This document shows, in pieces, positions 56,981 to 64,000 of a DNA stretch of 64,000 nt. A program made the translations under genes and the position numbers. The notes under the pieces were generated by a model, which made no database searches, was not told where the DNA came from, and saw only the letters and a list, made by a program, of their open reading frames with translations. The stretch is taken from positions 124,001-188,000 of IMG/VR virus record IMGVR_UViG_3300037264_008423; one strand, 5' to 3'. Position 1 is the stretch's first letter; each line of letters opens with the position of its first letter.

Positions 56981-57021
56981 AATTATTTTTGTTTACAAAT
57001 TCTACCCCATGCATCATCTTA

Positions 57022-59109
57022 ATGGAAAGAACCGAATATATGACCATAACTGACGCCCAACGGATCGTGGCTCTTAGAACTGAACTCACTGACCACGCCT
57101 ATCGCTATTACATCGCCAACTCGCCTTTTATTTCCGATGACGAGTATGACCTGAAGTTTAAACAGCTCGTGGAAATGGAGAATCAGCACCCCGAAATGTT
57201 CGACCCCAATTCGCCCACTCAGCGCGTTGGTTCGCCAATTCCCGGAGAGCAGCGCAAAATGCATCACCGGGTGCGTATGCTGTCGCTGGATAACACGAAC
57301 AGTCTTGACGAAGCGATGGATTTTCTGTCGGGTCAAGAGGGGAGAGAAGTGACTTTGGAGATGAAAATTGACGGCCTGAGCCTGCACCTGGACTACGAAA
57401 AAGGCAGGCTGGTCCGCGCCATCACGCGCGGCGATGGATCGGATGGCCAGGACGTGACGGAAAACGCGCGCACCATCCATACCCTCCCCCTGGTGCTGCG
57501 CCGACCCGTGGACATTTCAGTGCGCGGCGAGGTTTATTGGAGTCTGACCCAGTTTGAAAAGTATAACACGACGGTCGCCGAGGGAGACCGGTTTGCCAAT
57601 CCGCGCAATGGGGCTTCCGGCAGTCTTCAGCTCAAGGATTCCAGGGAAGTGGCGCGCCGCCACTTGAGTTTTGTGGCCTACAGCGTCCCCACGGATCTTC
57701 CCCCAGCCGTTACCACCCAGGAGGCCCTGCTGGAATATCTGGAAAGCCTGGGATTTATCAGCACCATGACGCTGCCGGTGCGCGCGGACATGGCCGGGCT
57801 GCCCTACTTGACCAGCGTGATTCAGCGGGAGGAGTTAGAGCGCGCGATTGGGTTTCTGAAAGAGTATCGGGCAAGCTTGGACCTGGAGACCGATGGCCTG
57901 GTGATTAAGCTTTCCTCCCTGGCGCTTCAGCGCGATTTAGGCGAGGGCACGCGCGCGCCTAAATGGGCGGCGGCCTACAAATTTCCCCCGGAGAGCAAAG
58001 AGGCGCTGCTCCTGTCCATCGCTCCGCAACTAGGTCGAACGGGACAAATTACGCCCGTAGCTAAAATCGAACCTGTGACGCTGGATGGCGTGGTGGTTCA
58101 GAGCGTGTCCCTGTGCAATCAGGACGAACTGGACCGGCTGGGCATTGATATCGGCGACTATGTTCAGGTCCAGCGCAGCGGCAAAGTGATTCCCAAGATC
58201 GTGGGCCTGGCGCGGCCCTCTCCTTCCAAGTCCAGCCCCCATCAGAGTTTTCAACTTCCCAAAACCTGTCCGTGTTGCGCCACAACTTTGATCCGCCCCC
58301 AGGGCATGGTCCACCTATACTGCCCCAACCCGGACTGCCCGGATCAGGTTTACGCTCGCCTGGTTTACGCCCTGGGCAAAGAGGCGCTGGACATTGACGG
58401 TTGCGGGGACATTACCGTGCGCTTGCTGGTGGAAAAAGCAGGTGTGAAGAAACTGTCCGATCTGTTCGCTTTAACCGAGTTTGGATTCATTAAGGGCGCG
58501 GCCCAGCGCAAGCTGAAGGAGGGTATCGAGGCCGCCAAGAAAGCTCCGCTTTGGCGCAAGTTGGCGGCGCTCAGCATCGAAGAAGTGGGCAGGGTCAAGT
58601 GCCAGGACTTGGCCACTAAATTCAGCCAACCGGTGCCTGCGGATGAATTACAAAAAGAGGAGACGGCGGAAAAGCCGGAAGACCAGCTCAACCCCATCCT
58701 GCGCATGATGAACTACTCCGGGCAGGTCGAACGCCTGATCGGCGCATCAGCTAAAGACCAGCTTATCAACTATCTGTATGACCATATCGACGAGCTGGAG
58801 CGCCTGGCCGATCACGGTTTTATTTTCAGCGCGGACGCCCGGTCTGCCGGTCCGCTCAGTGGCAAGACTTTTTGCATCACGGGCACGCTCATGAGCGGCA
58901 AGCGGGATGAAGTTAGCGCCTTGATCGAGAAGCTAGGCGGTGTGGTCAAGGGCGAGGTCACCAAGAACGTCGGGTTTTTAATTCAGGGGATGGGCGGGGG
59001 CAATAAAAAGGCGGCAGGCGCGCTCAAACACGGCACCCGGACGATCACTGAGGAGGAACTTTATCAGATGATGGGTGTCCCTATGCCGATCATGGGAAAA
59101 ATTGAGTAA
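57022..59109 (+). CDS. ligA: NAD-dependent DNA ligase
   Basis: YRYY, MLSLDN, EMKIDG, TRGDG, RGE, NPRN, DGLVIK, GRTG.ITPVA, Zn finger, C-terminal BRCT. Confidence 0.97.
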   Translation: MERTEYMTITDAQRIVALRTELTDHAYRYYIANSPFISDDEYDLKFKQLVEMENQHPEMFDPNSPTQRVGSPIPGEQRKMHHRVRMLSLDNTNSLDEAMDFLSGQEGREVTLEMKIDGLSLHLDYEKGRLVRAITRGDGSDGQDVTENARTIHTLPLVLRRPVDISVRGEVYWSLTQFEKYNTTVAEGDRFANPRNGASGSLQLKDSREVARRHLSFVAYSVPTDLPPAVTTQEALLEYLESLGFISTMTLPVRADMAGLPYLTSVIQREELERAIGFLKEYRASLDLETDGLVIKLSSLALQRDLGEGTRAPKWAAAYKFPPESKEALLLSIAPQLGRTGQITPVAKIEPVTLDGVVVQSVSLCNQDELDRLGIDIGDYVQVQRSGKVIPKIVGLARPSPSKSSPHQSFQLPKTCPCCATTLIRPQGMVHLYCPNPDCPDQVYARLVYALGKEALDIDGCGDITVRLLVEKAGVKKLSDLFALTEFGFIKGAAQRKLKEGIEAAKKAPLWRKLAALSIEEVGRVKCQDLATKFSQPVPADELQKEETAEKPEDQLNPILRMMNYSGQVERLIGASAKDQLINYLYDHIDELERLADHGFIFSADARSAGPLSGKTFCITGTLMSGKRDEVSALIEKLGGVVKGEVTKNVGFLIQGMGGGNKKAAGALKHGTRTITEEELYQMMGVPMPIMGKIE

Positions 59110-59169
59110 GCTGTAAAGGGTTGGCTGGCATGACTTTGCGTTGTCCGTAAAAATATTTTCATTTTTAAT

Positions 59170-59198
59170 TTGCATTGTTTACGAAAATAATTTAGTTT
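59170..59198 (+). promoter_or_regulatory. Sigma70-like promoter of the tRNA-array leader
   Basis: TTGCAT-N17-TAGTTT with AT-rich upstream sequence; 10 nt before ATG 59209. Confidence 0.55.
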
Positions 59199-59208
59199 CT
59201 GCTTGTCA

Positions 59209-59397
59209 ATGAGACGTAATGTCTTTACGGTGAAAGTGCAAATCAGAATGAACTTAGAGCGTCACATGTCAGTCAATTTAAAACCCGCCAATTCGGGACG
59301 GCATTATGCTGCCCTGATTCAAGGGTGGGATAGTGCCGCCGTGTTGTGCTTTAGCGCCCGTAGCACACGCGAACCAGGTCAGGAGGTAGCAGGATAG
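59209..59397 (+). CDS. Putative attenuator leader peptide (62 aa; alternative start 59248)
   Basis: Last codons GAG GTA GCA GGA TAG coincide with the antiterminator strand; contains all 20 amino acids. Confidence 0.55.
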   Translation: MRRNVFTVKVQIRMNLERHMSVNLKPANSGRHYAALIQGWDSAAVLCFSARSTREPGQEVAG

Positions 59398-59460
59398 GGT
59401 CGCACTCCAAAGAATTTTCATCCTGCTACCTCGAAAGAAGTCAGCAGGATTTTTCATTTT
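59383..59460 (+). promoter_or_regulatory. Antiterminator/terminator switch
   Basis: 59383-59395 pairs perfectly (13 bp) with 59420-59432; alternatively 59420-59450 forms a GAAA-capped hairpin followed by TTTTCATTTT. Confidence 0.75.
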
Positions 59461-59570
59461 ATGCCCCAGTGGGGACGAGAGCCAGGCCGTTAATCTGGTA
59501 AACGCCACAGTTAAAGACCCGTGGGTTCAACTCAGACTTGAGATCGTAGGTGTGTGTTCTTTGTTGAAAG

Positions 59571-59621
59571 GCCCCACGGCCTGTAGCCGCAAGCCGGTGA
59601 CCGCCGTGGGGCTTTTATTTT
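59571..59621 (+). terminator. Second terminator-like hairpin
   Basis: GCCCCACGGC-N22-GCCGTGGGGC followed by TTTTATTTT. Confidence 0.55.
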
Positions 59622-59696
59622 AAACCGTATTTAGAGAAAGAAAATTATGCCGACGCGCCAAGCCGAATCACAGAAGATCGCAGCCGCCGCGCGCAC

Positions 59697-59770
59697 GCGG
59701 GTATGGTCTAACAGCAGAACGAGGCGGTGCCAGCGCTTAGGTGGGGGTGCGATTCCCCCTACCCGCTCCA
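59697..59770 (+). tRNA. tRNA-Gly(GCC)
   Basis: GCGGGTA/TACCCGC acceptor, U73, CCA; anticodon loop GTGCCAG; T-loop TGCGATT. Confidence 0.9.
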
Positions 59771-59779
59771 AATTTAGAA

Positions 59780-59850
59780 TGCTACCGGTCTCAACGGTGA
59801 CGTGATTCAGACCACTGAGTCATCCGAGTTCTATCCTCGGCGGCTGCACC
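59780..59850 (+). pseudogene. tRNA-like element or degenerate tRNA
   Basis: T-arm CCGAG-TTCTATC-CTCGG, stem TGATTCAG/CTGAGTCA, imperfect acceptor stem. Confidence 0.35.
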
Positions 59851-59852
59851 GT

Positions 59853-59928
59853 GGGGGCGCATGTTCCGTAGCGGCGAGATTGCCTTGCAAGCAAACTGGG
59901 TCGGGTGCGACTCCCGTCACCTCCACCA
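59853..59928 (+). tRNA. tRNA-Ala(TGC)
   Basis: G3-U70, A73, CCA; loop CTTGCAA; T-loop TGCGACT; atypical D arm. Confidence 0.8.
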
Positions 59929-59934
59929 AATCTT

Positions 59935-59963
59935 TTGACAGATTTTTTTGCGCGCGGTAAGGT
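59935..59963 (+). promoter_or_regulatory. Sigma70-like promoter (leaderless)
   Basis: TTGACA-N17-TAAGGT, 5 nt before ATG 59969. Confidence 0.75.
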
Positions 59964-59968
59964 CAAGT

Positions 59969-60157
59969 ATGAAACGTAAACACTTTCTATATGGCCTGCT
60001 CGCAGGCGCGGCGTCCACTTTAATGCTGGTCTTGTTCCTAGGCGCGGCAGATCCCACTTGGCTGGACATCGCAAGCAGCCTGAAGCGGATCGCCCATTCC
60101 CTGGAGATGATCTCCGGCCAGCGGCCCGGTTGGAAAATTCCATACGCGGGTAAATGA
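59969..60157 (+). CDS. Small exported/membrane protein inside the tRNA array
   Basis: MKRKHFLYGLLAGAASTLMLVLFLGAA signal-like N-terminus. Confidence 0.7.
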   Translation: MKRKHFLYGLLAGAASTLMLVLFLGAADPTWLDIASSLKRIAHSLEMISGQRPGWKIPYAGK

Positions 60158-60162
60158 CCTTC

Positions 60163-60236
60163 GGGGCCATAGCTCAATAGCAGAGCGGGTCGTTCGCAAC
60201 GACTAGATCGGGGTGCGACTCCCCGTGGTTCCACCA
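60163..60236 (+). tRNA. tRNA-Ala(CGC)
   Basis: GGGGCCA/TGGTTCC, G3-U70, loop TTCGCAA, CCA. Confidence 0.9.
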
Positions 60237-60241
60237 GATTT

Positions 60242-60316
60242 CGGCTGCGTAGCTCAATAGCAGAGCGTGCGCGTCACATGCACAAGGAACCCGTGCGATT
60301 CGGGCGTGGCCGACCA
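60242..60316 (+). tRNA. tRNA-Val(CAC), apparent 8/4 fold
   Basis: CGGCTGCG/CGTGGCCG acceptor, CCCG/CGGG T-stem, loop GTCACAT, A73, CCA. Confidence 0.75.
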
Positions 60317-60332
60317 TTTTGTTCTAAAGCTT

Positions 60333-60776
60333 GTGATCAATAGTAAACAAATCAAAGCTGAATTAGCCGTCATAAAGGTGCAGGAAGCGGCACTTAAAAT
60401 GGGCCGGATATGCAGCAAACCTGTCATTGAAGGGACGCGCTACGATTTGATAGTTGATGACGGTAAGCGTCTTATGCGCGTTCAAGTCAAATACTGTGGT
60501 GGTTATTACGATGGCGTTGTTGCGGTTAAACTTAAAAGTTATGGTAGGCAGGGGGCAGACCGTAGCTATTGCGCCAGTGAAATCGACGCCGTTATAGCCT
60601 ATTCTGATGTGAATGACCGGCTTTATTGTCTGCCGATTACTATGCTAGCGGACAAAACAACCATCCGCTTGCGCCATGCTCGTCCTAGAAACAATCAAAA
60701 GCAGCGGATTTGGCAGGCAGAAGACTTTATATGGGGCTGTAGCTCAAATAGGCAGAGCAGCACGATGGCATCGTGA
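60333..60776 (+). CDS. PD-(D/E)XK homing-type endonuclease (group I intron-associated family)
   Basis: KAELAV, RYDLIVD, RVQVK, Y..SEID; GTG start 7 nt after GTTCT; 3' end overlaps tRNA-Ala(GGC). Confidence 0.85.
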   Translation: MINSKQIKAELAVIKVQEAALKMGRICSKPVIEGTRYDLIVDDGKRLMRVQVKYCGGYYDGVVAVKLKSYGRQGADRSYCASEIDAVIAYSDVNDRLYCLPITMLADKTTIRLRHARPRNNQKQRIWQAEDFIWGCSSNRQSSTMAS

Positions 60777-60809
60777 AGGTTGAGGGTGCGATTCCCTTCG
60801 GTTCCACCA
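60733..60809 (+). tRNA. tRNA-Ala(GGC)
   Basis: GGGGCTG/CGGTTCC, loop ATGGCAT, T-loop TGCGATT, ACCA. Confidence 0.85.
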
Positions 60810-60815
60810 ATTTTT

Positions 60816-61031
60816 GCCAATAAGCTGGGCGGTTGATCGAGACTTCCGTCTGGCCGAACGCGGTTACGATCAGCCGGGGGAACCGGTAAAACCTACGGCT
60901 GTTGGGAGCGAGGCTTGCCGAGCAGCAGGCCGCTTTGGCAGTATTTCACGGCACCCAACGTGGGACGGCGGCAGGCCGGTCGTGCGGTCTGTAAACGCGA
61001 CTCCGCCCGTCAGCGTAAAACAGGTGCCGTG
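60816..61031 (+). ncRNA. Structured ncRNA candidate (two multi-stem domains)
   Basis: CGGTTGATCG/CGATCAGCCG, GGCTTGC/GCAGGCC, CACGGCACC/GGTGCCGTG, CAGGCCG/CGGTCTG; lies between tRNAs. Confidence 0.55.
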
Positions 61032-61034
61032 TTT

Positions 61035-61110
61035 ACGGCAGTAGCTCAATTAGCAGAGCGGCGGTCTCCAAAACCGTTGGTTGGGGGTGCGAGTCCTCCC
61101 TGCCGTGCCA
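61035..61110 (+). tRNA. tRNA-Trp(CCA)
   Basis: ACGGCAG/CTGCCGT, loop CTCCAAA, G73, CCA. Confidence 0.92.
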
Positions 61111-61113
61111 TTT

Positions 61114-61353
61114 TTAGCGCGCGGGTTTTACTTTGCGCCGGGCGCGCGCCTTGCTTTTAGCAATGGGCGCTTGTTGGACATAACTCGGACACTTCGGGTT
61201 TTCGCAGTGACCGCCTTTTTTCACCAACCAGCCGCAAGCGCATTGGCTGAAGCAGTCACATTTTAAGAATCCCTGGGTGCCGCACGTGGGACAGACCACC
61301 GTGGCATCGATCAGGCGCTCAATGGCGCTCAAAGGTTTAGTTTGCATCGGCAT
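61114..61353 (-). CDS. Small Cys-rich protein antisense to the tRNA array
   Basis: CPTC..CDC..CACG..CENPKC. Confidence 0.6.
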   Translation of the reverse strand: MPMQTKPLSAIERLIDATVVCPTCGTQGFLKCDCFSQCACGWLVKKGGHCENPKCPSYVQQAPIAKSKARARRKVKPAR

Positions 61354-61378
61354 ACACTAAGTCATAGAATCAATTTTA

Positions 61379-61463
61379 CCCACAGTCCAGAAAGAGTGGA
61401 GGAAGGTCCCTACGCGCCACAGCGGAAGTAACGGGGCCAGGACCACAGTGGTTTGGACTGGGG
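61379..61463 (+). ncRNA. Rod-like hairpin RNA candidate
   Basis: CAGTCCAGA/TTTGGACTG, GTGG/CCAC, GGTCCC/GGGGCC nested stems with purine-rich internal loops. Confidence 0.45.
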
Positions 61464-61468
61464 TGAAC

Positions 61469-61556
61469 GGGCGTGTGACCGGAGCAGCAATCGGCACGGG
61501 CTGTAAACCCGTCGGCCTAAAAACCTACGCAGGTGCGAGTCCTGCCACGCCCCCCA
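61469..61556 (+). tRNA. tRNA-Tyr(GTA)
   Basis: GGGCGTG/CACGCCC, loop CTGTAAA, long variable arm, unusual C73, CCA. Confidence 0.88.
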
Positions 61557-61561
61557 TTTTA

Positions 61562-61650
61562 AGCGCCGTAGCTCAGAGGCAGAGCAAACCCAAAGCCTGT
61601 AACCAGGTGAGCGGTGGGGATGAGAGGTTCGAGTCCAATCCGGCGCACCA
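61562..61650 (+). ncRNA. tRNA-like RNA with expanded anticodon arm
   Basis: GCGCCG/CGGCGC-ACCA, canonical D arm and GGTTCGAGTCC, but a 24-nt insert in place of the anticodon loop. Confidence 0.6.
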
Positions 61651-61679
61651 TTCTTCCGTCTGGCGGTGTAATTAAAGGC

Positions 61680-62102
61680 ATGAACAGCAAGATTATCGGG
61701 GATATTTCCGAAGCATCCGTAATTGCGGCTCTTTTAAAATCGGGTTTGAACGTGTTAATGCCTTTCGGTGACAGGAACAGGTATGATATCGTGATTGAAC
61801 ATGACGGAAAATTTGAACGTGTGCAGATAAAAACAGGTAGGCAGCGCGGGAGAGTTATAGTCTATAATACACAGAGTTCAACTCGCGTTAACGGCAAACG
61901 GTGTGAATTAGGCTACCAAGGCCAAGTTGAAACTTTTGCGGTTTATCACCGTGAGCTGGATCGGGTCTATATGGTTCCTGTCGGTAAAGCAGCTACCGGT
62001 AAAGGGAGTTTGCGCTTGGGGCCTAAAGGCGGTTCTGGTGTAGGACCAAGATGCCTTTACGCTGATGACTATATTTTAAGGAGCGTTAGCTCAGTCCAGT
62101 AG
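61680..62102 (+). CDS. PD-(D/E)XK homing-type endonuclease (group I intron-associated family)
   Basis: GDISEA, PFGDRNRYDIVIE, RVQIKTG; GTAATTA 5 nt upstream; 3' end overlaps tRNA-Asp. Confidence 0.88.
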   Translation: MNSKIIGDISEASVIAALLKSGLNVLMPFGDRNRYDIVIEHDGKFERVQIKTGRQRGRVIVYNTQSSTRVNGKRCELGYQGQVETFAVYHRELDRVYMVPVGKAATGKGSLRLGPKGGSGVGPRCLYADDYILRSVSSVQ

Positions 62103-62156
62103 AGCAATCGACTGTCTATCGAAAGGTCAGGGGAGCAAAGCCCCTACGCTCCGCCA
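62080..62156 (+). tRNA. tRNA-Asp(GTC)
   Basis: GGAGCGT/ACGCTCC, loop CTGTCTA, G73, CCA; aberrant T-loop AGCAAAG. Confidence 0.85.
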
Positions 62157-62159
62157 TTT

Positions 62160-62268
62160 TTGCTTCCACAGCGCCGCCCCTGAAAGCGGCGACTGTTACG
62201 ATCCAGACAGGACAGATCGAGCCGGTTAAATAGAGTCCTTCTTTAATTGGCGGACAGCATGGAAGCAA
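62160..62268 (+). ncRNA. Four-way-junction RNA candidate with loop-loop pairing
   Basis: TTGCTTCCA/TGGAAGCAA closes three hairpins; loops contain complementary AGGAC/GTCCT. Confidence 0.6.
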
Positions 62269-62284
62269 TTTGTTCTTACGCGGT

Positions 62285-62899
62285 ATGACGAAACAGGAAC
62301 AGCTACAGGCCCTTTCTTACCGCGTGATCCGCTGCCGCCAGTGTCCGCACCTGGTCCTATCCAGGACGCAGACCGTGTTTGGCACCGGTAATCCCGACGC
62401 GGAGTTCATGTTCGTAGGAGAGGCACCCGGCAAAGATGAAGACCGGATCGGCGAGCCGTTTGTTGGCCGCGCCGGGAAATTTTTAACCAGCTTGATCCGC
62501 CTGATGGGATTTACCCGCGATCAGGTTTACATCGCCAACGTGCTCAAGTGCCGCCCGGACGCGGAATCAGGCAATCGCAAGCCGGAAGCGGAGGAGATGG
62601 AAAACTGCCTGCCGTTTTTAAAGGAGCAGATCCAGATCATCCAGCCCAAAGTTTTAATCGCCCTGGGCGCGACCGCCCTGGAGGGCTTGAAGGGCAAAAT
62701 CGCGCCCATCAGCCAAGTGCGCGGCCACATCTATGACTTTCACGGCACGCCCCTGGTGCCCACGTTTCACCCGGCCTACGTGCTGCGCAATTCGGCCACG
62801 GAAGTCCGCAGCCTGGTCTGGCGGGATTGCTGCCGCGCAATGGACTTGGCCGGTTATGACACCCTGGACCGGCGCGAATGGGTGCCGGACATGGCTTAG
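62285..62899 (+). CDS. Uracil-DNA glycosylase family 4
   Basis: CRQC.L, VGEAPG..ED..GEPFVGRAG, ANVLKCRP, PTFHPAY; GTTCT 8 nt upstream. Confidence 0.95.
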   Translation: MTKQEQLQALSYRVIRCRQCPHLVLSRTQTVFGTGNPDAEFMFVGEAPGKDEDRIGEPFVGRAGKFLTSLIRLMGFTRDQVYIANVLKCRPDAESGNRKPEAEEMENCLPFLKEQIQIIQPKVLIALGATALEGLKGKIAPISQVRGHIYDFHGTPLVPTFHPAYVLRNSATEVRSLVWRDCCRAMDLAGYDTLDRREWVPDMA

Positions 62900-64000
62900 G
62901 ATTGAGCGATGAAATTAAGGCTGGCGTAAATGGTTTCCCCAGCGCCAGTGAGCCTTTGCGCGCAGAGCCATAGCTCGTCGCGCCTGCCGCCGATGGACAT
63001 GCCCAGCCCAAAAAAGCCCGTCATTCCAATGTTGGCCAGGCTGGTGCTGGCAATCGCGTAAGCGGCCATAACCTCCGTGCCGCTGACACACGTGTTCGTG
63101 TTGGTCGTCGCGGCGGCATACTCCACGGCGCTGTTCGGGATGGGCACCCAGGAAATCGCGCCTGCGCCGTTGATGGTTGGGTTGACCACCAGGGAGCACC
63201 GCAGCGCGGCGTTGCTGGTGCAGGCGGCGGATAAGCCCGTGGGGCTGACCGTGGCGTGGGTGCCGCTCGTCGTGAGGCGGAGGCCCAGGACCGCGTATAA
63301 ATTCGCGTCGTTGCCGGTGGCAAAAGGATTAGTTCCCCGGCTCACCGCGCGCGGGTAGCCCGTATTGATAATGCCGCCCTCGCTAATGACCGTGGAGCAG
63401 ATGCAGCTCAGCGTGGCCGCCGCCCCCGCGCCGCTGCTGGCGAGTTCGTAGCGCAGCGGCAAATTCGGTGAGGAGGTATAAACGTCGGTGGACTGGTTGG
63501 AGTGGTGCGCGTCATGGACCCGGACCATGTGATGGCCAAGGATAAACCCGAAATGGACCGTGCCCACCCCTAGCCACTCAAAGTCGATAAACATGATTTG
63601 CGCTTTGGACAGATCCAGCGTAATCCCGGAGGGTCCGGTCCCGTCCAGCCGGTCCATGTTCCAATCCGCCTGAGCAAACGTTTCCGCCGCCAAGCCGTTT
63701 TTCCGCAGCACAAAGGCTGGTCCGCTGGCCGTCTGCTCCAATAAAAATCCGTTGAAATCGTCGAAGTAGCCGACACGCCGGGTAATGCCGGTGGAGGCGG
63801 CTCCCATCACGAAGGTCATCATGACCAACTGCGATTTTCCGGGTTGATAATTGAATCGGCGATAGGTCTGCCGGACGCGCGTGCCAGCAGTGCTGGCCGA
63901 GACCCCCAGCAGGACTTTGGCATTGGTCCGATCATGGGTGCTGGAGGTTCCCGTGCCGCTGGTCGGCTGGTCGTCCCACAGGTGGGGCGCGGCGTCCATG
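62896..64000 (-). CDS. Virion structural protein (5' end probably outside the window)
   Basis: RQT.RRFNYQPGKSQL, Q.DWN.DRLDGTGPSG, IDFEWLGVG.V.FG, PNLPLRYE pattern of large-phage structural proteins. Confidence 0.8.
   Translation of the reverse strand, partial: MDAAPHLWDDQPTSGTGTSSTHDRTNAKVLLGVSASTAGTRVRQTYRRFNYQPGKSQLVMMTFVMGAASTGITRRVGYFDDFNGFLLEQTASGPAFVLRKNGLAAETFAQADWNMDRLDGTGPSGITLDLSKAQIMFIDFEWLGVGTVHFGFILGHHMVRVHDAHHSNQSTDVYTSSPNLPLRYELASSGAGAAATLSCICSTVISEGGIINTGYPRAVSRGTNPFATGNDANLYAVLGLRLTTSGTHATVSPTGLSAACTSNAALRCSLVVNPTINGAGAISWVPIPNSAVEYAAATTNTNTCVSGTEVMAAYAIASTSLANIGMTGFFGLGMSIGGRRDELWLCAQRLTGAGETIYASLNFIAQS

What the first reader, a model, noticed from the sequence alone, without database searches (positions are those of the whole stretch)
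62160..62268. Four-way-junction RNA with kissing loops after tRNA-Asp
Seen: a 9-bp closing stem TTGCTTCCA/TGGAAGCAA encloses three hairpins: CAG-CGCCGC/GCGGCG-A-CTG, CGATC/GATCG and GCCGGTTAAA/TTTAATTGGC. The loops of the last two carry complementary AGGAC and GTCCT. It fills the gap between the tRNA CCA and the UDG GTTCT motif. I do not recognise it as a known family.
Basis: seen in the sequence. Interest (0 to 1): 0.62.

Follow-up and report, generated by a model that had tools for sequence, protein, structure and literature searches.

The report
Orphan structured insert after phage tRNA-Asp
A 109-base stretch between the last tRNA of a jumbo-phage tRNA array and a uracil-DNA glycosylase gene does fold on paper into the four-armed shape described. 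It is a one-off insertion with no relatives, no known family and no expression data, so it is only a weak candidate RNA.

Summary
The sequence observation holds. Window 62160-62268 (+) folds into a 9-bp closing stem around three perfect hairpins (MFE -41.9 kcal/mol, z -3.86, stable in every flank tested), and it sits exactly between the CCA of a non-canonical tRNA-Asp(GUC) and the GTTCT motif before the UDG gene.

The evidence for a functional RNA family is thin:
- GC-corrected, about 1% of 120-nt windows of the same 238-kb phage genome fold as well (rank 39 of 3972).
- The 5-nt "kissing" complementarity arises in 7-10% of shuffled loops.
- Rfam gives nothing.
- The element is single-copy in the genome.
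- It is absent from the same junction in 10 related phage contigs. In the relatives without a homing endonuclease (HE), the tRNA-Asp CCA lies 4-9 nt from GTTCT. In the relatives that carry the endonuclease + tRNA-Asp module, homology stops exactly at CCA-TTT.
- Pattern scans and a covariance model found no homologue. Covariation and expression therefore could not be tested.

My best reading is a lineage-specific insertion at the edge of a mobile endonuclease + tRNA-Asp module. It is probably transcribed as the tail of the tRNA array and acts at most as a local structured spacer. Interest is low to moderate. Several conserved RNA features nearby look more promising.

The parts
61680..62102 (+). 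PD-(D/E)XK homing-endonuclease ORF (PDDEXK_5, I-Ssp6803I-like). Its 3' end overlaps the tRNA-Asp gene.
   Evidence: Pfam PF11645, E 9e-30. PDB 2OST, E 2.3e-10. Homologues in related contigs always precede a tRNA-Asp.
62080..62156 (+). Non-canonical tRNA-Asp(GUC) with T loop AGCAAAG, U37 and an encoded CCA. It forms the right end of the endonuclease + tRNA module.
   Evidence: Rfam tRNA, 51.3 bits. Not called by ARAGORN. Orthologues in L008, L059, L060, L065 and L066.
62157..62159 (+). T-run trailer between the CCA and the closing stem. The other tRNAs of the array also carry a short T-rich trailer after their 3' end.
   Evidence: Read directly.
62160..62268 (+). The 109-nt element: the predicted four-way junction. 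Single copy and an insertion relative to relatives.
   Evidence: Fold. Single copy. Insertion shown in the alignment.
62160..62168 (+). 5' strand of the 9-bp closing stem (it doubles as a terminal inverted repeat). It pairs with 62260-62268.
   Evidence: Pair probabilities 0.7-1.0 for 8 of the 9 pairs.
62169..62195 (+). Hairpin 1: 9 bp with one bulged A (62192), loop CCCUGAAA.
   Evidence: Pair probabilities 0.97-1.0. There is a weak, non-significant resemblance to the 3'-terminal hairpin of the CC0196 model (14 bits, E 0.34).
62199..62219 (+). Hairpin 2: 5 bp, 11-nt loop carrying AGGAC (62209-62213).
   Evidence: Pair probabilities 0.72-0.87.
62221..62251 (+). Hairpin 3: 10 bp with two G.U pairs, 11-nt loop carrying GUCCU (62235-62239).
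   Evidence: Pair probabilities 0.85-0.99 for 9 of the 10 pairs and 0.48 for the loop-closing pair. The G.U pairs favour the + strand as the RNA.
62252..62259 (+). Unpaired junction strand GGACAGCA. It repeats the GGACAG of loop 2 and could compete for the GUCC of loop 3.
   Evidence: Read directly. 4-nt complementarity.
62260..62268 (+). 3' strand of the closing stem.
62272..62276 (+). GTTCT gene-start motif: the right border of the insertion and the first base conserved with relatives.
   Evidence: Conserved in L002, L003, L004 and L008. Genome-wide, 9.6% of GTTCT copies lie 6-9 nt before the start of an ORF of 80 aa or more, against 1.4-7.0% for the other 19 arrangements of the same five letters.
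62276..62326 (+). Conserved hairpin holding the UDG start codon (62285). It is not part of the insertion.
   Evidence: RNAalifold on 5 phages: 11 pairs, 4 with compensatory double changes.
62285..62899 (+). UDG-superfamily gene (a source labels one homologue 'uracil-DNA glycosylase family 4').
   Evidence: Pfam PF03167, E 1e-37. Homologues.

Best explanation
The element is a lineage-specific, single-copy 109-nt insertion. It sits at the right-hand edge of a mobile homing-endonuclease + tRNA-Asp module, where that module meets the gene-start signal (GTTCT) of the UDG gene.

It lies on the same strand as the whole ligase, tRNA array and UDG block, with no terminator in between. It is therefore most likely transcribed as the tail of the tRNA-array transcript.

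Once the tRNA-Asp 3' end is cut, the RNA would fold by itself into a compact four-way junction only 3-4 nt after the cut. I infer that it acts, if at all, as a local structured spacer or cap. It would insulate tRNA-Asp folding and processing from the UDG leader hairpin and shield the neighbouring RNA end from exonucleases. I do not think it belongs to a conserved RNA family.

Shown: the insertion, its borders, its uniqueness and the predicted fold. Inferred: transcription, processing and any cap or spacer role.
For: - Context. The window is part of a 238-kb, 96%-complete virus record. The element ends a + strand tRNA array.
- Insertion in the HE-less relatives. The tRNA-Asp CCA is 4 nt (L004-L007) or 9 nt (L002) from GTTCT, and the alignment shows a clean gap of about 110 nt.
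- Insertion in the HE-carrying relatives. In six related modules where the endonuclease ORF abuts tRNA-Asp (L008, L059, L060, L061/62, L063, L066), and in L065, which carries the same tRNA-Asp variant, homology to the window ends at CCA-TTT. Each carries different DNA after that point.
- Native empty site. The 'CCA + T-run + GTTCT + 7-8 nt + start' arrangement occurs elsewhere in this genome, at genome 184321 and 194907.
- Uniqueness. There is no second copy by BLAST or by covariance model and no coding potential.
- Fold. It is robust and favours the + strand. No terminator-like site lies between the tRNA and UDG.
- Precedent. The T4 tRNA cluster holds a homing endonuclease (SegB), is transcribed as one precursor, and ends with the small 'species I' RNA (PMC2330249).
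Against: - No transcript data exist. Only the DNA of the source sample covers the element.
- Relatives manage without any such spacer, so a needed cis function is not obvious.
- About 1% of windows of this genome fold equally well, so the structure could be incidental.
- If GTTCT is a promoter rather than a translation signal, the element is a 3' tail and not a 5' leader. I cannot tell which.
Confidence: 0.42

Rival explanations
1. It is a stand-alone small stable RNA of about 110 nt, cut out of the tRNA-array precursor like T4 species I/II RNAs. It would act in trans, for example as a ligand of the phage's own Ro60 ring protein (a divergent Y RNA) or as a decoy for a host RNA-targeting defence.
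For: - Its topology is that of YrlA-type Y RNAs: a closing stem around three hairpins, about 110 nt.
- The same phage encodes Ro60/TROVE (genome 205564-206628), a tmRNA, and sub-threshold full-length YrlA-like RNAs (36.6 and 27.8 bits).
- The fold is clean and + strand biased.
- It sits at the end of a tRNA cluster, as T4 species I RNA does.
Against: - It has no GNCGAAN0-1G Ro60-binding motif and no T or D arm.
- It is not found by the YrlA model, even at E 10.
- It lies 19 kb from Ro60, whereas reported Y RNAs lie within 4 kb (PMC4201824).
- It has no homologue in any relative, although those relatives keep other small RNAs of the array.
Confidence: 0.2
2. It is DNA-level debris with no RNA role: either a miniature inverted-repeat element or a repair or recombination scar left when the endonuclease module homed next to UDG. 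On this reading the fold is a by-product of inverted repeats.
For: - It has perfect 9-bp terminal inverted repeats, flanked by TTTT on the left and TTT on the right. That is compatible with a 3-bp target duplication of the native CCA-TTTT-GTTCT site.
- It sits exactly at a module boundary where every relative differs.
- Fold stability is only top 1% and the kissing is not significant.
Against: - There is no other copy in the phage.
- The 50 IMG/VR hits and 2 prokaryote-genome hits that share the termini are unrelated inside.
- T runs flank every tRNA here, so the 'duplication' may be coincidence.
- Three internal perfect hairpins with G.U pairs on one strand are not what a simple inverted-repeat element or snap-back repair gives.
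Confidence: 0.28
3. It is a cis-regulatory RNA for UDG (a riboswitch, thermosensor or self-cleaving ribozyme) that controls the start-codon hairpin just downstream.
For: - It lies directly upstream of a conserved hairpin that holds the UDG start codon.
- Four-way junctions with loop-loop contacts occur in some ribozymes and riboswitches (general knowledge).
Against: - No Rfam ribozyme or riboswitch matches at any threshold.
- Relatives keep the UDG leader hairpin without the element.
- No alternative pairing between the element and the leader appears in the folds.
Confidence: 0.05

Closest known systems
T4 species I / species II RNAs (small stable RNAs encoded in the phage T4 tRNA gene cluster)
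   Same: They are small non-tRNA RNA genes embedded in a phage tRNA cluster that also holds a free-standing homing endonuclease. They are co-transcribed with the tRNAs, and species I is the last gene before the transcript ends (PMC2330249).
   Different: The T4 RNAs are experimentally observed stable species and occur in several T-even phages. This element has no expression data and no relative.
YrlA-type bacterial and phage Y RNAs (Rfam RF02553), ligands of Ro60
   Same: Size of about 110 nt, with a closing stem enclosing three hairpins and loop-loop tertiary contact. The same phage encodes Ro60 and YrlA-like candidates.
   Different: There is no tRNA-like T or D arm, no GNCGAAN0-1G motif and no YrlA model hit, and the element is 19 kb from Ro60. 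The complementary loops are hairpins 2 and 3, not 1 and 3.
Miniature inverted-repeat elements (for example Correia or RUP-type elements of about 100-150 bp)
   Same: Size, perfect terminal inverted repeats, a possible short target duplication, and an intergenic insertion that is co-transcribed with neighbours.
   Different: It is single copy. No family shares the termini in IMG/VR or in 185,579 prokaryote species genomes. The terminal repeats are only 9 bp.
Flanking DNA co-converted with free-standing homing endonucleases (T4 SegB and other Seg enzymes; I-Ssp6803I family for the enzyme fold)
   Same: The element lies at the edge of an endonuclease + tRNA module in a phage tRNA cluster. Homing carries flanking sequence along and creates mosaic borders (PMC2330249). 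The enzyme is PDDEXK_5 / 2OST-like.
   Different: No cleavage site, donor or recipient was identified. That the element arrived by homing is inference only.

Membership tests
Any Rfam 15 family | Covariance-model score at or above the gathering threshold | tested here: not met
   No hit on the whole window at gathering. No hit at E<=10 on 59000-63000. On 62150-62285 alone there were only 14.2-bit and 12.7-bit partial hairpin hits.
tRNA or tRNA-like cloverleaf | Acceptor, D, anticodon and T arms with T-loop and D-loop signatures | tested here: not met
   No tRNA hit on either strand by ARAGORN or by Rfam tRNA at E<=10 on the isolated region. Stem lengths are 9/9/5/10 and loops are 8/11/11. There is no significant alignment to neighbouring tRNAs.
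Y RNA / YrlA | Long stem formed by the 5' and 3' ends, 80-130 nt overall | tested here: met
   9-bp closing stem, 109 nt. Feature as given in PMC4201824.
Y RNA / YrlA | GNCGAAN0-1G (Ro60-contact) motif near the 5' end | tested here: not met
   The motif is absent from 62160-62268 (sequence; motif from PMC4201824).
Y RNA / YrlA | Encoded within about 4 kb of the Ro60 gene on the same strand | tested here: not met
   Ro60/TROVE lies at genome 205564-206628 (+) and the element at 186160-186268 (+), about 19 kb away.
Y RNA / YrlA | tRNA-like module (T arm, acceptor-like hairpin, D arm) detected by the YrlA model | tested here: not met
   The YrlA model finds other places in the genome (up to 36.6 bits) but not the element at E<=10.
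Miniature inverted-repeat transposable element | Terminal inverted repeats | tested here: met
   TTGCTTCCA / TGGAAGCAA, 9 of 9.
Miniature inverted-repeat transposable element | Target-site duplication | tested here: inconclusive
   TTTT on the left and TTT on the right. All tRNAs of the array are followed by T runs and GTTCT motifs are preceded by them.
Miniature inverted-repeat transposable element | Multiple copies, or a parent IS with the same ends | tested here: not met
   One copy in the phage. Pattern hits elsewhere are unrelated inside. The host genome is unknown, so this test is incomplete.
Intrinsic terminator | GC-rich hairpin followed by a U tract | tested here: not met
   No terminator-like site was called in 62157-62284. 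Hairpin 1 is followed by ACUGUUAC.
Self-cleaving ribozymes with multi-helix junctions (twister-sister, hairpin, hammerhead) | Conserved catalytic core recognised by the family models | tested here: not met
   No hit at E<=10. Cleavage itself is not testable here.
Stable RNA of a phage tRNA cluster (T4 species I/II type) | Non-tRNA RNA gene inside or at the end of the tRNA transcription unit, on the same strand | tested here: met
   It follows the last tRNA of the 59697-62156 array on the + strand with no terminator between.
Stable RNA of a phage tRNA cluster (T4 species I/II type) | Accumulates as a discrete processed RNA | not testable with these tools
   No RNA run holds the phage.

The most novel reading that the evidence does not exclude
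The element is the first seen member of a new class of phage small RNAs. It would be a compact four-way junction, locked by a loop-loop kiss, that is released from a tRNA-array precursor and acts in trans. It could, for instance, be an unorthodox partner of the phage-encoded Ro60 or a decoy against a host RNA-targeting defence. On this reading its relatives are simply too rare or too diverged for exact-pattern scans.
Probability: 0.1. Interest if true: 0.6.

Novelty: new member of a known kind. Interest (0 to 1): 0.25.

Why it matters
If it were a real RNA, it would add to the very small set of non-tRNA RNAs known from phage tRNA clusters. Those RNAs (T4 species I/II) have had no assigned function for decades. 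It would also come from a phage that carries its own Ro60, Y-like RNAs and tmRNA.

As it stands, its main value is as a marker of mosaicism. It shows where a homing-endonuclease + tRNA-Asp module joins the resident genome. It also drew attention to conserved features nearby that can be tested by covariation: the hairpin motif before tRNA-Tyr, the UDG start-codon hairpin, and the GTTCT gene-start motif.

Tried and rejected
- Rfam at three stringencies: nothing.
- Paralogue in the 238-kb genome by blastn-short and by a single-sequence covariance model: none.
- The same model on 45 related, pattern-hit or UDG-bearing loci: one hit only, 18 bits in L067. That locus had been pre-selected for identical termini, lies inside a 418-aa ORF and folds differently, so I rejected it.
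- Decayed copy of the ancestral tRNA-Asp (as in L002/L004), of the window's own tRNA-Asp, or of other spacers of the array: local alignments are no better than shuffles, z -0.2 to 1.3.
- Remnant of the minus-strand small ORF that follows tRNA-Asp in L008 and L060: no tblastn hit even at E 100.
- Coding potential: stops in all + frames. The 50-aa minus-strand frame has no homologue among 5.8 billion proteins.
- Exact or degenerate pattern scans:
  - Termini in IMG/VR: 50 hits, all at chance level inside.
  - Loop 2 + loop 3, loop 1 + loop 2, and loop 3 + junction in IMG/VR: 0, 0 and 1 chance hit inside a coding region.
  - Loops in prokaryote genomes: 0.
  - Termini in prokaryote genomes: 2 chance hits.
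- Metagenome scan for the tRNA-Asp variant: 2 more modules, neither with the element.
- Close relatives in IMG/VR through UDG, ligase or a UDG alignment: none above 46% identity.
- Sequencing runs: only the source sample covers the element. Two runs of another study hold near-identical short pieces elsewhere in the array but not here. There are no RNA runs, no variants and no joints at the element.

Full report
**Setting.** The window is bases 124001-188000 of a 238,436-bp virus record judged 96% complete, that is, a jumbo phage from a sediment metagenome. On the + strand, an NAD-dependent DNA ligase gene (56989-59109) is followed by a tRNA array from 59697 to 62156. The array holds seven Rfam-positive tRNAs; ARAGORN misses two of them. 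Inside the array are two PDDEXK_5 endonuclease ORFs (60267-60776 and 61614/61680-62102). The second matches PDB 2OST at E 2.3e-10. From my own knowledge, 2OST is I-Ssp6803I, the tRNA-intron homing endonuclease. After the array comes a UDG-superfamily gene (62285-62899). The next gene (62896-63999) is on the minus strand and matches a virion structural protein family. The finding is the 109 nt between the last tRNA and UDG.

**Observation.**
- RNAfold gives the same four-way junction: -41.9 kcal/mol, z -3.86, and none of 200 dinucleotide shuffles as stable.
- Helix probabilities are 0.7-1.0, and the fold survives in four larger contexts, including the tRNA and the UDG 5' end.
- The minus strand is worse (z -3.15), because the two G.U pairs of hairpin 3 become mismatches. 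This weakly favours a + strand RNA.

Two controls lower the weight of the fold.
- After correcting for GC, 38 of 3972 windows of the phage's own genome fold better.
- The 5-nt AGGAC/GUCCU match appears in 6.9% of loop shuffles. A match between any loop pair appears in 8-10%.

The region has stops in all + frames and no credible ORF. An independent Logan contig of the source run confirms the sequence without differences.

**Known families.** Nothing in Rfam 15 matches. This holds at gathering threshold, at E<=10 on 4 kb, and at E<=10 on the 136-nt region alone, where only 12-14-bit partial matches to hairpin 1 appear. The element is not tRNA-like on either strand, and it has no significant similarity to any tRNA or spacer of the array.

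**Comparative evidence.** UDG homologues of 59-80% identity and endonuclease homologues of 49-72% identity exist on metagenomic contigs, and I fetched their surroundings. These relatives share the order ligase, tRNAs, UDG.
- In the relatives without the endonuclease (L002; L004-L007), a different tRNA-Asp(GUC) sits directly before UDG. Its CCA is 4 or 9 nt from GTTCT.
- A three-way alignment shows the window's element as a clean insertion of about 110 nt. Conservation resumes at GTTCT.
- In contigs where the endonuclease ORF is seen (L008, L059, L060, L061/62, L063, L066), it always runs into a tRNA-Asp gene. L008, L059, L060 and L066 share the window's odd T loop (AGCRAAG) and U37, as does L065, which was found through that tRNA variant.
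- BLAST homology to the window stops at base 62160, the first base of the element. Each contig then continues with something different: a minus-strand ORF in L008 and L060, other ORFs or tRNAs, or another small RNA motif in L065.
- In L008 homology resumes inside UDG.

So the element occupies a variable junction at the edge of what looks like a mobile endonuclease + tRNA-Asp module. It is seen in this phage only.

**Searches for any homologue.**
- There is one copy in the genome, by BLAST and by a covariance model built from the sequence and its structure.
- That model finds nothing in 45 related or candidate loci, except a pre-selected chance match inside an ORF.
- Eight IMG/VR scans, two prokaryote-genome scans and one metagenome scan gave only chance hits or modules without the element. 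These used patterns for the termini, the loops, and the tRNA-Asp variant.
- IMG/VR holds no close relative of this phage.
- Covariation therefore cannot be tested.
- No RNA run holds the phage, so expression cannot be tested either. The only full holder is the likely source sample.

**What the surroundings say about how it would work.**
- All genes from the ligase to UDG are on one strand, and no terminator-like site separates the tRNA from UDG. The element is therefore very probably transcribed with the tRNAs.
- GTTCT is not peculiar to UDG. Across the genome, 28 of 291 GTTCT copies (9.6%) lie 6-9 nt before the start of an ORF of at least 80 aa. The 19 other arrangements of the same letters give 1.4-7.0%. 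The motif usually follows an A/T-rich run, and twice it occurs as AGAAC-N6-GTTCT between or before genes.
- The native arrangement 'tRNA CCA, T run, GTTCT, 7-8 nt, start codon' occurs elsewhere in this genome, for example after tRNA-Val at window 60316. It is what the HE-less relatives have at UDG.
- Directly after GTTCT, a hairpin (62276-62326) that contains the UDG start codon is conserved among five phages, with compensatory changes in 4 of 11 pairs.
- The element is thus wedged between two self-contained signals: the tRNA trailer and the gene-start motif with its leader hairpin.
- Whether GTTCT is a promoter core or a translation signal is open. The element is accordingly either the 3' tail of the tRNA transcript or the 5' leader of the UDG message.
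- T4 offers a precedent. Its tRNA cluster is one precursor that contains the SegB homing endonuclease gene and ends with the small species I RNA. SegB targets the T-arm sequence of tRNA genes and co-converts flanks (PMC2330249).

**The Y RNA idea.** A relative (L093) and this phage itself encode Ro60/TROVE. The phage also has a tmRNA (55 bits, above the 47-bit threshold) and sub-threshold but full-length YrlA-like RNAs with clear T arm, acceptor-like hairpin and D arm. YrlA has the same gross topology as the element: a closing stem around three hairpins. I tested membership against the features given in PMC4201824.
- Size and terminal stem are met.
- The Ro60-contact motif GNCGAAN0-1G is not met.
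- The tRNA-like arms are not met.
- The YrlA model score is not met.
- Location within 4 kb of Ro60 is not met.

The element is not a Y RNA by these criteria, although binding to Ro60 cannot be excluded without an experiment.

**The mobile-element idea.** The 9-bp perfect terminal inverted repeat and the T runs on both sides would fit a tiny inverted-repeat element with a 3-bp duplication. Against this, there is no second copy in the phage and no parent element. No family shares these ends in the collections scanned, and T runs are the rule at both kinds of flank anyway.

**Verdict.** The structure prediction is correct, and the element belongs to no described family. It is nevertheless a singleton insertion whose fold and loop complementarity are within what this genome produces by chance about once per hundred windows.

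I rate the readings as follows.

| Reading | Confidence |
|---|---|
| Orphan insertion at a homing-module border, co-transcribed, at most a local structured spacer | 0.42 |
| Inert DNA scar or mini-element | 0.28 |
| Trans-acting small RNA | 0.20 |
| Cis-regulator or ribozyme | 0.05 |

Interest is 0.25.

Noticed in passing
window 61385-61465 (+); also L002 1905-1995, L004 3632-3722, L065 1421-1514: A conserved hairpin RNA motif of about 85 nt sits just upstream of tRNA-Tyr (closing stem, GUGG/CCAC stem, GGYCCC/GGGRCC stem, with invariant AGGAA and CGGAAGUAA). In L065 it sits right after the tRNA-Asp variant. RNAalifold gives 25 pairs, 8 with compensatory changes in only 4 sequences. There is no Rfam hit. 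It looks like a real, undescribed phage RNA motif and a better candidate than the finding.
   Followed up: partly
window 61680-62156 and 60267-60806; L008, L059, L060, L061/62, L063, L066 (and the tRNA variant in L065): PDDEXK_5 (I-Ssp6803I-like, PDB 2OST E 2e-10) endonuclease ORFs always run into a tRNA gene. The second one is linked in six related contigs to a tRNA-Asp(GUC), in most of them with T loop AGCRAAG and U37. HE-less relatives carry a different tRNA-Asp at the UDG junction. This suggests a mobile endonuclease + resistant-tRNA module.
   Followed up: partly
window 59746, 59904, 60212, 60785, 61086, 61532 (T arms): Six T arms in the array (five Rfam-positive tRNAs and an uncalled tRNA-like stretch) read GGUGCGAnUCC, with G at position 55 where U (pseudouridine 55) is near-universal. 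Several tRNAs outside the window show U-G-C-G-A or other non-UUCRA T loops. Given that T4 SegB recognises the T-arm sequence, this could reflect endonuclease or host-nuclease avoidance.
   Followed up: no
window 61557-61650 (+): A tRNA-like RNA has an acceptor stem ending in ACCA, a D arm and a canonical GGUUCGAGUCC T arm. Its 'anticodon arm' is replaced by a longer stem capped by a tetraloop. Neither ARAGORN nor Rfam tRNA calls it, and there is only a weak YrlA partial hit nearby.
   Followed up: partly
window 62272-62326 (+): The UDG start codon (62285) sits in a hairpin conserved in five phages, with 4 of 11 pairs showing compensatory changes. GTTCT lies just 5' of it.
   Followed up: partly
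genome-wide, e.g. genome 175068/175075, 184321, 194907, 209141: GTTCT preceded by an A/T-rich run lies 6-9 nt before many start codons: 9.6% of copies, against 1.4-7.0% for the 19 other arrangements of the letters. It sometimes occurs as a palindrome AGAAC-N6-GTTCT between divergent genes whose start codons are only about 30 nt apart. It is a phage-wide gene-start signal of unknown kind, either promoter core or ribosome-binding substitute.
   Followed up: partly
outside the window: genome 205564-206628, ~203211-203641, 211669-211780, 188828-188930, 204588-204652: The phage encodes a Ro60/TROVE protein (133 bits), a tmRNA (55 bits, above threshold) and several sub-threshold YrlA-like RNAs, one about 1 kb upstream of Ro60. 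Relative L093 (from a 246-kb contig) also has Ro60 plus a TubZ-like tubulin.
   Followed up: partly
window 59850-59930 (+) and 60807-61034 (+): The first is a further tRNA-like stretch ending in CCACCA with a GGUGCGACUCC T arm, called by no tool. The second is a 228-nt non-coding spacer between tRNA-Ala(GGC) and tRNA-Trp. The spacer shares only a 9-nt word with the element, which is not significant.
   Followed up: no
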